DNA of 63,739 nt, filler included, from Reticulomyxa filosa (Eukaryota; Protista; Foraminifera): assembly GCA_000512085.1 (NCBI GenBank). It is 17 parts of 17 records of this genome, joined end to end, with 100 filler letters (N's around TTAATTAATTAA, not from the genome) between each part and the next. Parts side by side here need not be neighbours in the genome. Positions count along the whole stretch, not along the records: positions 15,573 to 18,887 come from ASPP01012385.1; 16 more parts are not named here. One strand, written 5' to 3'. Both the position numbers and the translations under genes were made by a program. A model generated the notes under the pieces. It was not told where the DNA came from, did no database searches, and saw only the letters and a program-made list of their open reading frames with translations. This document shows, one piece after another, positions 2,727 through 18,887 of the stretch. Each line of letters opens with the position of its first letter. The first letter of the stretch is position 1.

Positions 2727-4900
2727 AATTTATTTGATTAATTGGAGATTGTACTCCTAATATTGTAGACAAATTGATATTGTTCACCGACCCAAACTCT
2801 TCATATTCTTTCACATTGGCAATATTCTCTGTTGTTGATCTGATCCATCATGAAAGAGTCACTCCATTAATTTTCTGAATATCATTTGCATATCGACGTT
2901 TTTGTAACGTTTTCTCCAAGACAGCAGTATTTGCACATGCTTTCTTCTTCATTTGCAGTTCCACCACTTTCACTGCCTGTCGATTTAACATATTCTGATT
3001 GCTGCAAAAACAAACAGTAAATGAATTCAAATTATTTAAAAAAAAAGATAAAAATAATAAATAAATTTTAACTGAGTCTTCTTTCAATGTGTTCGAATAA
3101 AGGAAATCATTTCCTACTTGACAATGACAACAATTTTTTTTTTTTACATTGAAAAAAATAATTCAAATTGCAATAATATTTTCCATCAAATCAACACGAA
3201 AAGTCATAATAATTGCATTTTGAAATATTTCCATGTATCTTTGGTGTCGATGTTGGAGGATCACATACAGCATAAGCATAAATATATGTAAAAGGTGACG
3301 ACTGACATTGATGAATTGGAGTACGTTGAATGAAAGCATTGTGTGATAATCCAAATGTCGCTGTGTGATTGCAAGCACATAACAATTAATTATCACTTAT
3401 TTCATTTTATAGACATCATCCATAACCACTCATAGTTTTGATAACACGAATAGCAACACTTTTAAGGGATTATTGTCGGTTCTCTTTCATTTACACTTTC
3501 TCCATGCTTTTTTTGATGTATTCATATCTCTTGCACTCTTCATTGCCAATTTCATATCTTTTTGAGATAATCCAATAATATTATTGGTTCTTTCTTTTCT
3601 TTTTTCATTCCCTTAATTTACTCTTCTTCTTGCCTTTCTTCATTTCTCTTTCTTTTGTCACAAATCTAAGGCAAATCATTCTACAATGTAATGATCCATG
3701 CTCACGTTGTTTTGATTAAAACACATCACAAAAGCTGAAAATATGATAAAAGTAGCTCATACCTTCAAATAAAGCTGTCTTCTTTCGCGTTTGATTGATC
3801 TTGTCATTTTGAATGCCTTTTTCTCCACTGTTCTGACGTTGGTAATATGCGCTCTGTGTCTTGAACTCGAGTAATGGCAGTATTGCATGCCACGAGAGAA
3901 TTTTCCACAGAATACTTCAATTTGCGTTGTATTGTGGTAGATCAAGAAAGCATCAATAGCAATACAATTTTTCATTCCACTAATTGATTGTATTCACATT
4001 GTTATTTTTGATGATAACATCCATGCTTTCACTTGAAATATTTTGTTTCTTCAGTTTGTATTCACATTAATAACGCATCAATTGGAGATTATCGAAGAAA
4101 GACGAACGTATTCATTCCAACAAATACTTGTTCCAAATTTACTTCGATTGATTGATATTTTTCTTTTGTGGGACTTGGTCTTGTACTGTCCCAAAAGCAT
4201 TAAATCTATGTCACACTTAAATTTTCACAAGTCTATCGATTTTCAAAATAGATAAACTAAACTCCTTGAATATATGTTGAACACTCGATAGATTTGAAAA
4301 TGATCTCATATATGCTCTCAACGATATTGCAATGTAATAGAGTTTTAATCTGCATTAACAATGGTCTGGAAGCGCAGCTCGTTCACATTTGAATCCTTAT
4401 TCGACGAACGAATCTCCAAATTAATTCTTGTGTCAATTGAGTGAATAGTGCGACCCGTATTTTTTCTTTGTCGATGCCGGTTCCAGGAAAATCTTTTATA
4501 TTTAGCAACTGGATTGAATTTATATAATTAAAAAAAATTACTGCATTGTTGCTATTGTTCCATTTGCGTTATTCACTTCTTACCAACGCCACAATTCAAT
4601 ATCTTCACCACAGCGACCTACATAAATAAAAATAAGTCTCGAACTGATAGTCGATTGCTTTGTTCAAGTTCTTTACAAAAAGAATTTGGCAAAATGTTGT
4701 TTACTCTTTGATTTGTTTCTCCGCTCTCGATATTATTTATCCTTCTGCCTTCATTGGAACTTCCATTGACATTACTTTGGCAATCATTTCTCATCGTTAT
4801 TGCTGTTCTTAATTTAGATTCAATCTTCTTCACTTTGAACATCGCCACATAATATTTTAATTATATAAACGACTGCCTTCTGCTTGCTGACCATGTGTAA
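2727..4900 (-). pseudogene. Decayed GPS(GAIN)-motif membrane-protein gene (adhesion-GPCR/polycystin-like)
   Basis: CACNHTATFG (~3380-3350) resembles the GPS cleavage motif CxCxHLTxF. The region has many stops and frameshifts and is collinear with 28700-29785. The upstream boundary is approximate. Confidence 0.45.
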
Positions 4901-5597: not shown

Positions 5598-5915
5598 TGC
5601 AAGGGGGAATCTATTGAATCACAAACACAAGATTATACAGCAAAAGAATATCTATGTATATATAAATGAACATGAATATCACAAACCATTATTCCTCATT
5701 GAGGATACGGGGTAGATTGCGACCCTTATTCTTTTTTTTCTTTTGTGTGGAGGTAGGAAAACATATTTGTAACGATCTTTGCATATGGGGGAACCTATAT
5801 CACACAATACAAAACATAACATTTACACATGTTTAAAAAAAGGATAGATAGAACAAACCTGTATTTCTCCTTTCGGAGACGGGGTGGTTTCTACCCCTTA
5901 TTCTTTTTTCTTTTC
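5598..5915. repeat. Diverged ~180-bp tandem duplication; each unit carries two short hairpins
   Basis: Both units start TTGCA..GGGGGAA.CTAT and end ACCC(C)TTATTCTTTTTT. Hairpins are at 5693-5705 and 5710-5725, and at 5866-5879 and 5881-5897. Confidence 0.6.
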
Positions 5916-15572: not shown

Positions 15573-15616
<44 letters not shown>

Positions 15617-15993
15617 CATAACTTATTTGCTTTATACACAAATCAATCATCTTGACAACTCTGATGGAGCGTAACATATTTCATAATAAGCTTATTAAAT
15701 TCATTAATCCATCCACTTTGAATTAAACAAGATTGAAGCCAATTATCTAATATAATGTTTATCTTTTGTTCGCTCTATTTGTTTTTTTTTTTTTTTTATC
15801 ATAAAATAGAACACTTTTATTCTAAGTAATTTTTGTTATCTTGTTCTTTGGTCGTTACCGAATATAATACGTGCAATTTGCTTTCATCTACATTCTCTTG
15901 CTGCTGTTCAGTGGACTTGTTGTCGGGAAATAAATTATCCACAGCTTCTGTATTTGCTGCAGAGTTTAAGAGCAAAGACAGACAAATACCCAT
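15573..15993 (-). CDS. 5' part of a putative N-myristoylated/palmitoylated protein carrying the GWI module; exons 15993-15859, 15774-15676
   Basis: MGICLSLLLNS...KLHVLYS|SEQKINIILDNWLQSCLIQSGWINEFNKLIMKY|gttacg. It has an MGxCxS N-terminus and the same donor context as the module exon of the WD40 genes. The gene continues beyond the contig end. Confidence 0.65.
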
Positions 15994-16359
15994 TTCAATT
16001 GCAAGATCAGGAATTTTATTTCCAATTACTGGTCAATTGTAGTAAAAAAAAAAAAGGAGGCTTGAATCTAAAATCAAAACTGAAGAAGCTTTTATATTTA
16101 CGTTGGTTTGTGCTGAAAACTGCAACAAATAGAATGTGGCATAACAATTTCTGCAGACAACACAACAACGCTATTATTACAAGTAAGAGACGAAGACAGA
16201 AAATTCTTGTAGTTATTGTTTTGTTAAAAAAAAAAACAAGTGCTAAATAAAAAATACTAAACAAGACAGTCTATAAAAGAAACTGCTTGCACAACAAAAC
16301 AATTGGTATATTGTGGTTTTTCTAACAAAAACCTTTTTTCTTTTTGGAAATATCTAGAT

Positions 16360-18887
16360 ATGATGACTGAAGCAAAATCTGATGTATTAAAAACACCAAC
16401 TTTGAGTTCTGACTTGTATGATCCAAAATGGAGAGCTTTAAAGGCATTATATGAGGACGTAGTAAGTGAGGAAACGTTAAAAAAGAAGTTGAATGATCAT
16501 GGAGGAGATATTAATGCAGTGATCCAAGATATTTCGCAAAACGAATTGAAACTGGAATCAGTGGATTGGATCCAAAGAGATTACGGTTACGCTCGAAAAG
16601 TAGAAGAGATTGAAAAGCTGACACTTGCTGCGACAAAAACAGTATTTACTAAAAAAAAAAAAAAAACACAAATTTGGTTGACAAGTAATCGAAATACGTA
16701 TCCCCACGCACCATAAAAAATGGGTCCATTTCCAAAAAAAAAAAAAAAAAGGAAAAGGTGATGTGGTATGCCTGTAACTTTGCCGATCACCGAAAAGAGG
16801 AGTTGTTCGTTGATATTTTGGAACGTTTTAAACCGTACGTGGACATGGCAAAGAAATTCACTTATGGCCACCACCGAGTTTTTTTTTTTGCAAAAAAAAA
16901 AAAAAGTGCGTGTCATGTGCAATGTTTGGGTAGGAAAAAATCTATTTAAAAAAAAGAATAGCATGATTTGTTGGGACACTTGGTGTCGCCTGCCTCGGTG
17001 AATAATGTGAGATGCGTGCGATATTTGCTGGAGTCGCAATTAGTGAAGCCATTGGACAGGGAATTGAAACGTGCGTTGAATTTGGCGACCCTATTTCAAA
17101 ACGAAGACTGCATGAAGCTGCTGTTGAGCGCGAATTATTTGGATGAGAGAGACAAAGCCATGCGCGACTATGCATTGCAATATTTGAAAGAAAAGAGCAA
17201 ATCGGAGGTGTTATTGGGATATTTGAAACAGCATTTGAACAAGTTGGAATTGAAAGTGGTGATGAATGCATTGTGCAAAGTAATGCAAGAAATGATCAAA
17301 GATCGCAAATGCATTAGCACCGATCTGTTCAACTTGTGTTGGCTTTACGACTCGAACAAAATGTGGGAGGTCATGTTTTCAAAGTGTCAGCAGCTGCTGA
17401 ATATTGATACATTATCAGAAAAGCCAAATGATTGGCAATGGTTATCCGAATATATGGTCGAAGATCGAAACTTATTAATTTGGTTGGAACGTTGTGTCAA
17501 TGATAAAGATAAAGAAAAGAACAAAGATAAAGATAAAGAAAAGAAAAAAAAAGAGAATGAAGATAATGGTGATAGCGACGAAGACGAAGAAGAAAATGAA
17601 AAGAAAGGAAATGATATATATTGGTCGAAAATAAAAACGTTATGTGATGAACAGCGATATAAAGAAATGATAGTTTATCAAAACACATTGAAAAAAGAAA
17701 TTGACAGCAATGAAGAGAAATTTGCAGAAATATGCTCTTGGAAGTGTTCGAATGTAATATCTCCCAAATATTTGAATAAAAAGAGCAATTGGAGACAAGA
17801 TGCATTTCCAAATGGAGTGAAATGTCATTTGTCGGAACAAGACTTGCTGCAAATGTCTTTGAAAAGTCGCGATGTCACGTTTCGTCCAAAGCATACGTAC
17901 GACTTTGATTTGTATCTGACGGAGCTGCTTTCACGTGCACACGAAGTCGATGAGCAATTTCAAACACTCACAAAACGCATTTTCAATAAATGCAAAGGCT
18001 GTTCGTTTTTAAGTGGACCCATCAAAACTCACGAACGTTGTAAAATGAAAGCTCAGGTCGAATATCGCAATGAAAATTTTCCCAAATCGGCCCATATTTT
18101 AGATATCATTCGTTGTCAGGCCACTTTTGATACCATTGTCAATTTTCGAAATGGTTTGTTCCTTTTGGTCGATCAAATTGGTGCCAACAAAACTAACTTT
18201 GAAATTATGCGAATTAAAAATGGTTTTGAAATTAAAGAAATTAATAATAATAATAACAACAATAATAAGAATGATGATGGTAATAAAAAATTATACAGCG
18301 AACGACTAAAATTGGAAATTCCACAAGAATATAAAGACATCAAAATCAATGTGATATTTACAAATGACAAAGGTCTTCGCGTAGTCGGAGAAATCCAATT
18401 GCTATTGCAACCCATTTCAACATTTAAAGAGAGACAACATCAAATTTATGAGATTTCAAGACAAGAAGAATATCGCTTTGGCGCTTTAAAGCAAGTGTCG
18501 ATTCATTCGTTTGCGTTTCAATTGAAAATGTCAGGTTGTCATCCATCATCATTGTCGCCATTAATGTTGTACTTCCCTTTGGAATTCCGTCGATGTCCAT
18601 ACGTGTTGACTCAAAAAGACTCGGAAGGAAAAAACTATCTCTCGCAATTGGCGTACAATGAAAATTTACATTTGAATTGCGTTCAAGAAATGCTACAAAG
18701 CGGAAATTTCATGCCCACACAAGTGGTACAAAAGCAATTGGCAGAAACAAATCAATTTGGAAATTATCCACTTATGTATGCCTTATGGAAGCAATCTTCT
18801 ATTTCTTTGGTTCAATTATTTGTGCCTGAATCATCTACCAATGCACAGATTATTTGGAATGCTTTAGATGAGGTTTGCTTTTTTATT
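16360..18887 (+). CDS. CUE-like/ankyrin-repeat protein with a RelA/SpoT-synthetase-like nucleotidyltransferase domain (3' partial); exons 16360-16641, 16758-16877, 16962-18872
   Basis: Motifs SGPIKT, ILDIIRC, RIKNGF, EYKDIKIN, GEIQLLL and HQIYE follow the order and spacing of RSH SYNTH motifs. Ankyrin-like segments: RCVRYLLES, EDCMKLLLS, KDSEGKNYL, NQFGNYPLMYA. The N-terminal LKALY..LNDHGGDINAVIQDI is CUE-like. Confidence 0.8.

What the first reader, a model, noticed from the sequence alone, without database searches (positions are those of the whole stretch)
16360..18887. Spliced eukaryotic ankyrin protein with a RelA/SpoT-synthetase-like nucleotidyltransferase: candidate alarmone or second-messenger enzyme
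Seen: an intron-containing, AT-rich gene (so not a bacterial contaminant). It encodes a CUE-like N-terminus, ankyrin-like repeats, a helical region, and at ~18000-18470 the motif series GPIK / LDIIR / RIKN / YKD / GEIQ / HQIYE, followed by more ankyrin repeats. Known: RSH SYNTH domains use R.K, D..x.R, GY.S.H and E.Q motifs to transfer pyrophosphate from ATP, making (p)ppGpp or (p)ppApp or, in toxic SAS enzymes, modifying tRNA CCA ends. Well-studied eukaryotic RSHs are plastid-targeted, and no hydrolase or TGS domain is visible here. Inference: the catalytic Asp, Glu-Gln and base-stacking Tyr are kept, but GYxSxH is replaced by EYKDIK, so acceptor specificity may differ. A ubiquitin-binding-like domain plus repeat sensors wrapped around a signalling NTase looks like a sensor-effector for stress or innate immunity in a heterotrophic protist.
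Basis: partly seen in the sequence, partly recalled or inferred. Interest (0 to 1): 0.88.

Follow-up and report, generated by a model that had tools for sequence, protein, structure and literature searches.

The report
Foraminiferan ankyrin-wrapped alarmone synthetase family
A gene of the giant protist Reticulomyxa filosa encodes an enzyme domain like the bacterial enzymes that make the stress nucleotides (p)ppGpp and (p)ppApp; it belongs to a large family in foraminifera that Pfam misses, which suggests that these plastid-free eukaryotes make such nucleotides themselves.

Summary
The piece is a whole 3,315-bp contig of the foraminiferan Reticulomyxa filosa; its protein is misnamed 'RasGEF' at NCBI. 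Three exons are backed by paralogues. Exon 3 encodes ankyrin repeats, a helical domain, an RSH synthetase (SYNTH) domain at 17880-18473, and more ankyrin repeats. Pfam misses the domain, but its confident model matches alarmone synthetases first (SaEAS Z 13.6, B. subtilis SAS1 13.4, RelP 13.0, Tas1 11.8). By sequence it belongs with the RelV/Apk1(Tas1) branch, not RelA/SpoT: P-K-R-K, DxxR, K[ND]xF, YxD, ExQ, K-H-Y. Of 546 related clusters, every named close relative I looked up was foraminiferan; 125 of 143 complete domains keep all nine core residues; partner domains vary (coronin, RCC1, ZZ/C1). Two corrections: YxD is shared with RelV/VpEAS, which make only (p)ppGpp, so it does not by itself signal a new acceptor; and the CUE/ubiquitin claim found no support. 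Most likely a regulated cytosolic purine-nucleotide pyrophosphokinase. Activity, product and expression of this gene are untested.

The parts
16360..16641 (+). Exon 1 (94 aa from ATG): a short, probably three-helix element and a linker; CUE/UBA-like by eye only, without the MFP and LL ubiquitin-binding motifs
   Evidence: 43% identical counterpart in paralogue locus L019, same exon order; no CUE/UBA hit
16642..16757 (+). Intron 1, GT..AG, phase 0, with poly-A tracts
   Evidence: intron at a matching place in L019
16758..16877 (+). Exon 2 (40 aa), helical segment ahead of the ankyrin repeats; exact 3' donor inferred
   Evidence: homology to P0002, P0007, P0033 and L019; synonymous pattern against L001
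16878..16961 (+). Intron 2, GT..AG, phase 0; near its acceptor the second copy L001 switches from diverged to near-identical
16962..18872 (+). Exon 3, 637 codons, open; its model is confident throughout (pLDDT 92.5, pTM 0.88)
16995..17132 (+). N-terminal ankyrin repeats
   Evidence: Pfam Ank_2 E 4.2e-8
17145..17735 (+). Family-specific all-helical domain (conserved SdDll, WxW and W motifs) with a Lys/Glu/Asp low-complexity insert near 17500-17580; no HD-hydrolase match seen, but not searched alone; candidate regulatory clamp
17793..17801 (+). Near-invariant RQD motif just ahead of the synthetase domain (92-99% of family members)
17880..18473 (+). RSH SYNTH (pyrophosphokinase) domain of the RelV/Apk1 branch
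18018..18050 (+). Syn1-equivalent P-x-K-x3-R-x3-K (K407, R411, K415 of ETO20660.1): ATP triphosphate binding, inferred; same form as in Tas1
18102..18113 (+). Syn2 D433-x-x-R436: Mg-binding Asp and adenine-stacking Arg, inferred; same spacing as SaEAS D121/R124
18210..18350 (+). Acceptor side: R469-x-K471-N472, an Asn-rich loop insert (about 18240-18290), then Y509-x-D511-x-K513-x-N515
18390..18461 (+). Syn4 E529-x-Q531 and the C-terminal helix K541, H545, Y548, R552
18510..18872 (+). C-terminal ankyrin repeats; the array continues in further exons beyond the contig end
18873..18887 (+). Start of intron 3, cut by the contig end
   Evidence: exon ends at the same place in L001, L006 and L019

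Best explanation
The gene encodes a cytosolic, multi-domain small alarmone synthetase of the RelV/Apk1 (Tas1, exported alarmone synthetase) branch of the RSH superfamily, one of many foraminiferan paralogues. Shown here: the SYNTH fold, an intact and family-conserved active site, the ankyrin-helical-SYNTH-ankyrin layout, the expansion, and variable partner domains. Inferred from RSH chemistry: ATP binds the K/R/K helix, D433 holds Mg2+, and the enzyme moves pyrophosphate from ATP to the 3'-OH of a purine nucleotide stacked on Y509, most likely GDP/GTP to give (p)ppGpp, as RelV and VpEAS do. Inferred from architecture: the bacterial relatives are lethal in cytoplasm, so the helical domain and ankyrin arms probably keep the enzyme off until a protein ligand binds, and different paralogues couple the same output to different inputs (stress, cytoskeletal or non-self signals). 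A bacterial origin by gene transfer is likely but was not tested with a rooted tree.
For: The model (pLDDT 89.7) matches only RSH synthetases in the top 50 Foldseek rows; VIA Z 13.6 SaEAS, 13.4 SAS1, 13.0 RelP, 12.6 CapRel, 11.8 Tas1, against at most 10.5 for polymerase-beta-type enzymes. A broadened profile finds Tas1 as its only significant PDB hit (E 1.5e-4), and 8 of its 40 members hit PF04607. The foraminiferan profile scores 40-48 bits on RelV-like and myxobacterial domains but about 0 on E. coli RelA/SpoT (hhalign 96.8%). Nine core residues are intact in 125 of 143 complete domains. The sequence clusters holding V. cholerae RelV and VpEAS carry KNRF..GYRD..EVQLHL, and these enzymes make (p)ppGpp only (PMC12691689). 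Extra basic residues on the acceptor side (R469, K471, K513, K541, R552) fit a nucleotide di- or triphosphate rather than tRNA, by analogy with PMC11782079. No hydrophobic N-terminus here; only 2 of 88 long paralogues have one. Partner domains vary.
Against: No activity data. No RNA evidence for this gene. Motifs predict the product poorly in this branch: Tas1 makes (p)ppApp, SaEAS both, and swapping Syn motifs did not switch Apk2 (PMC12226406). The foraminiferan family has Lys at Y+4 where RelV/VpEAS and Apk1 have Asn. No hydrolase partner could be looked for. Autoinhibition by the flanking domains is inferred, not measured on the model. Several Reticulomyxa-type paralogues have decayed sites.
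Confidence: 0.6

Rival explanations
1. It is an Apk1/Tas1-like (p)ppApp synthetase, or a dual-specificity one like SaEAS, that acts as a self-destructive or anti-microbial effector: once triggered it drains ATP or GTP locally, sealing off an infected part of the multinucleate cell or killing engulfed bacteria.
For: Syn1 and Syn2 match Tas1 almost residue for residue. The closest bacterial relatives found are C-terminal domains of long polymorphic-toxin-like proteins and a phage gene between a portal gene and a hydrolase gene. Expansion, decay and shuffling are typical of conflict genes.
Against: The Syn3 motif is YxD as in RelV, not YxGxN as in Apk1 and Apk2. No export signal.
Confidence: 0.17
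2. It pyrophosphorylates a different acceptor, such as the 3' end of tRNA or another RNA, or another nucleotide or cofactor, which the ankyrin arms help to present.
For: The family has its own acceptor-side residues (Lys at Y+4, N515, R469, RQD) and a long, variable loop before Y509. CapRel is among the top structural matches (Z 12.6).
Against: tRNA-modifying toxSAS keep the R-K-S-K Syn1 and a smaller positive patch (PMC11782079); the characterised enzymes of this branch act on nucleotides.
Confidence: 0.12
3. The domain is catalytically silent or nearly so and serves as a nucleotide-binding or scaffolding module of an ankyrin protein.
For: The canonical Syn1 Arg and Ser are replaced; some paralogues are degenerate; no partner hydrolase is known.
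Against: The same Syn1 form is present in the very fast Tas1. The residues kept at 93-100% over distant paralogues are exactly the catalytic ones, and this copy keeps all of them.
Confidence: 0.1
4. The sequence is a bacterial contaminant or an assembly artefact.
For: The contig is short, and 1.9 kb is near-identical to another contig whose exon 2 differs.
Against: GT-AG introns at matching places in three other loci; relatives in two other foraminifera. A chimeric join would change only which 5' exons belong to the enzyme.
Confidence: 0.01

Closest known systems
RelV of Vibrio cholerae and VpEAS of V. parahaemolyticus (RelV subfamily, exported alarmone synthetases; (p)ppGpp only; PMC12691689)
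   Same: SYNTH-only enzyme with K-x3-R-x3-K, DxxR, K[ND]xF, YxD, ExQ and K..H..Y motifs; the foraminiferan profile finds RelV-like Photobacterium proteins at 40-48 bits.
   Different: Eukaryotic and spliced, no signal peptide, wrapped in ankyrin and helical domains, multi-copy; Lys at Y+4 (Asn in RelV/VpEAS, though Lys in the Photobacterium homologues), KNGF for KNRF, and an extra RQD motif.
Apk1/Tas1 (P. aeruginosa T6SS toxin; (p)ppApp; PDB 6OX6; a divergent RelV-subfamily homologue per PMC7229694)
   Same: Syn1 and Syn2 nearly identical in form; only significant PDB sequence hit of the broadened profile; structural match Z 11.8; R330/E382/Q384 correspond to R436/E529/Q531.
   Different: Syn3 is YxGxN in Tas1 and YxDxKxN here; no PAAR/T6SS delivery domain and no adjacent immunity gene.
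SaEAS (Streptomyces exported synthetase; PDB 8VX3; makes both alarmones)
   Same: Best structural match (Z 13.6, rmsd 3.6, 159 residues); D121/R124 spacing equals D433/R436.
   Different: Secreted single-domain bacterial enzyme; 14% identity.
Canonical RelA/SpoT/Rel, RelP/RelQ and plastid RSH1-4
   Same: SYNTH fold; catalytic Asp, stacking Tyr, ExQ.
   Different: No HD, TGS or ACT domain; lacks RxKxxxS, DxxxxR and YxSxH; no profile similarity to E. coli RelA/SpoT; the host has no plastid.
divRel: sporadic small synthetases of fungi, Dictyostelium and diatoms (PMC3153485)
   Same: Precedent for SYNTH-only genes in eukaryotes outside the plastid line, probably acquired from bacteria.
   Different: Described as sporadic and unplaced; no large ankyrin-fused expansion and no foraminifera in the passages read. 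Whether the diatom divRels belong to the sister group found here was not tested.

Membership tests
RSH superfamily, SYNTH domain | SYNTH fold (polymerase-beta-like nucleotidyltransferase core with RSH helices) | tested here: met
RSH superfamily, SYNTH domain | Catalytic Asp, basic Syn1 helix, acceptor-stacking Tyr, ExQ | tested here: met
   K407/R411/K415, D433, Y509, E529/Q531 present and 93-100% conserved
RSH superfamily, SYNTH domain | Pfam PF04607 match | tested here: not met
   0 of 125 family members hit it; 8 of 40 members of the broadened set do
RSH superfamily, SYNTH domain | Pyrophosphate transfer from ATP to a 3'-OH | not testable with these tools
   needs biochemistry
Long RSH (Rel/RelA/SpoT, plastid RSH) | HD hydrolase domain plus TGS/ACT | tested here: not met
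   no such match by Pfam, NCBIfam or structure; the helical region was not folded and searched alone
Long RSH (Rel/RelA/SpoT, plastid RSH) | RxKxxxS, DxxxxR, YxSxH, ExQxRT motifs | tested here: not met
   alignment with E. coli RelA and SpoT
RelV/Apk1 (exported alarmone synthetase) branch | K-x3-R-x3-K Syn1, DxxR Syn2, C-terminal K..H..Y helix | tested here: met
RelV/Apk1 (exported alarmone synthetase) branch | Profile similarity to RelV-like and Tas1 sequences above that to canonical RSH | tested here: met
   40-48 bits against about 0; hhalign 96.8%; Tas1 E 1.5e-4 through the bridged profile
RelV/Apk1 (exported alarmone synthetase) branch | Placement inside the branch in a rooted tree with all SAS subfamilies | tested here: inconclusive
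   the trees held only RelV-like, myxobacterial, phage and RelA/SpoT rows; Tas1, RelV and other SAS had no tool reference and were left out
RelV/Apk1 (exported alarmone synthetase) branch | Export signal or secretion-system domain | tested here: not met
   no hydrophobic N-terminus; no MuF, PAAR or LXG domain
Apk1/Apk2 (p)ppApp synthetases | Syn3 GxN signature | tested here: not met
   YxDxKxN here
CUE/UBA ubiquitin-binding domain (exon 1) | Profile match and MFP/LL binding motifs | tested here: not met
   exon 1 was not folded
Ras guanine nucleotide exchange factor (NCBI name) | RasGEF/CDC25 domain | tested here: not met
   no such Pfam or structural hit

The most novel reading that the evidence does not exclude
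Foraminifera have turned a bacterial exported-toxin synthetase into a large family of receptor-like enzymes, in which swappable sensor domains control the making of a hyperphosphorylated nucleotide. This would be a cytosolic alarmone signalling or innate-immune pathway in plastid-free eukaryotes, parallel to the cGAS-like and TIR systems, possibly with a product of its own.
Probability: 0.35. Interest if true: 0.9.

Novelty: new variant of a known kind. Interest (0 to 1): 0.74.

Why it matters
Eukaryotic (p)ppGpp synthesis is established for plastids; animals have the hydrolase MESH1 but no obvious synthetase (PMC10107265), and the few other eukaryotic synthetases are sporadic (PMC3153485). 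Here a plastid-free lineage carries many intact synthetase genes of a branch known so far from bacterial secreted enzymes and toxins, invisible to Pfam and misnamed at NCBI. The held literature has no paper joining ppGpp with foraminifera or RelA/SpoT with Reticulomyxa (subscription journals not covered). The family makes cytosolic alarmone signalling in eukaryotes directly testable and gives a profile for finding missed synthetases elsewhere.

Tried and rejected
Pfam, NCBIfam and single-sequence PDB searches miss the domain. The large ML tree timed out; smaller trees were used. Rejected: RasGEF; NCBI's 5' frame at 16768; long RSH; cGAS/TUTase/polymerase-beta as best fold; CUE as an established domain; and my own first mapping of N515 to Apk1 N370 (read without gaps, K513 sits there). 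The motif shuffle used a pattern drawn from this sequence, so I give it no weight. Two Aravind-group papers I wanted to check for prior mention were not held.

Full report
Source and gene model. The piece (15573-18887) is a complete 3,315-bp contig of Reticulomyxa filosa; its NCBI product ETO20660.1 (P0001) is named 'Ras guanine nucleotide exchange factor, partial'. No RasGEF domain was found by Pfam or structure. The sequence shows three exons with phase-0 GT-AG introns: 16360-16641, 16758-16877 and 16962-18872, then a donor at 18873 that runs off the contig. Exon 1 has a 43% identical counterpart in paralogue locus L019, in the same order ahead of exons 2 and 3. Exon 3 ends at the same place in L001, L006 and L019. 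No RNA run was found, so splicing is inferred. As the operators asked, I searched exon by exon by reference and left out the joined-protein step; the folds used exon 3 or parts of it.

The domain. Pfam and single-sequence PDB searches see nothing at 17892-18494. A full HMMER scan found 546 related clusters at E up to 0.001, 256 at 1e-10. In 125 aligned domains the residues kept at 90-100% include K407, R411, K415, Y420, P426, D433, R436, R469, K471, N472, Y509, D511, K513, N515, E529, Q531, K541, H545, Y548 and R552 (ETO20660.1 numbering). The AlphaFold2 model (pLDDT 89.7) matches only RSH synthetases in the top 50 Foldseek rows. In the wide structural search SaEAS scores Z 13.6, B. subtilis SAS1 13.4, RelP 13.0, CapRel 12.6 and Tas1 11.8, above TdT (10.5), GLD-2 and cGAS-like enzymes.

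Which branch. The motifs are not those of RelA/SpoT. The family profile scores about 0 bits on E. coli RelA and SpoT but 40-48 bits on two RelV-like Photobacterium proteins and on myxobacterial C-terminal domains, and 30 on a phage protein (hhalign probability 96.8%). A sister group from metagenomes, often fused to TPR or EF-hand domains (P0194 and kin), bridges to Tas1 (E 0.005 alone; E 1.5e-4 with the broadened profile, its only significant PDB hit) and to PF04607 (8 of 40 members). Tas1 has the same P-x-K-x3-R-x3-K and DxxR motifs and is described as a divergent RelV-subfamily homologue (PMC7229694). In the supplement of PMC12691689 the representatives of the clusters holding V. cholerae RelV and VpEAS read KNRF, GYRD, EVQLHL and a Lys twelve residues after the Glu, as here. 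These sequences and Tas1 have no tool reference, so I read them by eye and left them out of all trees. In the trees, the foraminiferan-type domains form one well supported group (100/99) on a long branch; its union with the TPR/EF-type group against the bacteria has 90/88, neither shown nor rejected. The taxonomy of the TPR/EF group is not established; the nearest ESM Atlas clusters are mostly ciliate and diatom among the few members with a record.

Product. RelV and VpEAS make only (p)ppGpp, Tas1 makes (p)ppApp and SaEAS both; all are toxic in bacterial cytoplasm (PMC12691689). What is particular here is Lys at Y+4 (His in RSH, Asn in RelV/VpEAS and Apk1, Lys also in the Photobacterium homologues), N515, R469 and an RQD motif ahead of the domain. 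Motif swaps did not change Apk2's product (PMC12226406), so prediction is weak. My estimate, given activity: (p)ppGpp about 65%, (p)ppApp or both about 20%, another acceptor about 15%.

Architecture and family. The exon-3 model is confident throughout (pLDDT 92.5, pTM 0.88): ankyrin repeats, a conserved helical domain with no hydrolase match, the SYNTH domain, and ankyrin repeats that continue in later exons of L001. The high pTM suggests a fixed packing of these parts; whether they cover the active site could not be measured. All named close relatives that I looked up are foraminiferan: R. filosa (ETO20660, ETO35982, RFI_01368, RFI_08959, RFI_22575, RFI_22376, RFI_35901), Nonionella stella and Bolivina argentea; many others are unnamed marine metagenome genes. 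The EukProt sets for the last two species are transcriptomes by my own knowledge, which would mean that family members are expressed. Partner domains differ: coronin-type WD40, RCC1, ZZ and C1 fingers, long ankyrin arrays, and two SYNTH domains in one chain. 125 of 143 complete domains keep all nine core residues, while several Reticulomyxa-type copies have decayed. A second R. filosa contig has exon 3 with only two base differences but an exon 2 that is 65% identical in protein, with the switch at the intron-2 acceptor: recent duplication with 5' exchange, or an assembly join. Exon 1 looks like a small three-helix UBA/CUE-type element by eye, but no profile supports it and it lacks the usual ubiquitin-binding residues (own knowledge).

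Mechanism, shown and inferred. Shown: fold, intact site, branch by profile, expansion, domain shuffling, no export signal. Inferred: Mg-ATP pyrophosphate transfer to a purine nucleotide; restraint by the helical and ankyrin parts, since the unrestrained bacterial enzymes are lethal; activation by ligand binding; use in stress signalling or defence. A hydrolase partner could not be searched genome-wide.

Novelty. Eukaryotic SYNTH-only genes are known as sporadic divRels in fungi, Dictyostelium and diatoms (PMC3153485), and RelA/SpoT-like toxin domains are known from bacterial polymorphic toxins and plant-directed effectors (PMC3482391). I found no description of a RelV/Apk1-type, ankyrin-fused expansion in foraminifera, within the limits of the library. 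Verdict: a real finding, a new variant of a known enzyme kind; interest 0.74.

Noticed in passing
window 16745-18887 against L001 64-2207: A second R. filosa contig (ASPP01001109.1, ETO35982.1) differs by two bases over exon 3 but has a diverged exon 2 and intron 2; the switch lies at the intron-2 acceptor. Either 5' exon exchange between paralogues or an assembly join.
   Followed up: partly
window 16768 (NCBI model ETO20660.1): The NCBI model begins in the wrong frame, omits exon 1 and carries the wrong name RasGEF.
   Followed up: yes
L001 2256-3310: Further short exons with ankyrin-like repeats complete the gene; a nucleotide-sugar transporter gene follows on the other strand.
   Followed up: partly
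L019 near 5636-5771 and L006 near 5650: Two R. filosa paralogues each show a frame break inside exon 3; sequencing error or pseudogene not resolved.
   Followed up: no
P0014, P0113, P0033, P0008, P0022, P0016: Reticulomyxa-type paralogues with decayed catalytic motifs: possible decoys or inactive regulators.
   Followed up: partly
P0015, P0095, P0123, P0013; L002 1-1869: Family members fused to a coronin-like WD40 propeller, RCC1 repeats or ZZ/C1 fingers, or with two SYNTH domains; a PH-ankyrin frame lies directly upstream of P0013 and may be part of the same gene.
   Followed up: partly
P0194, P0203-P0234; L007, L017, L018: A sister group of RelV-type synthetases fused or adjacent to TPR repeats, some with EF-hands; probably from algae or other protists, taxonomy not established; possibly calcium-regulated.
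   Followed up: partly
L014 2086-4351 (Bordetella phage vB_BbrM_PHB04): An unannotated protein right after the portal gene ends in a RelV-type synthetase domain; a small gene and an alarmone hydrolase gene follow, the layout of the Apk2 loci but with a YxD motif.
   Followed up: partly
L009-L012, matches at 3001-3324: Myxococcota MAGs encode long polymorphic-toxin-like proteins that end in a RelV-type synthetase domain.
   Followed up: partly
L013 1118-2962 (Photobacterium sp. DA100): Two tandem, unannotated RelV-like genes with signal-peptide-like N-termini.
   Followed up: partly
window 18240-18290 and 17500-17580: An Asn-rich insert in the acceptor-side loop and a Lys/Glu/Asp insert in the helical domain; both are low-complexity and have lower model confidence.
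   Followed up: no
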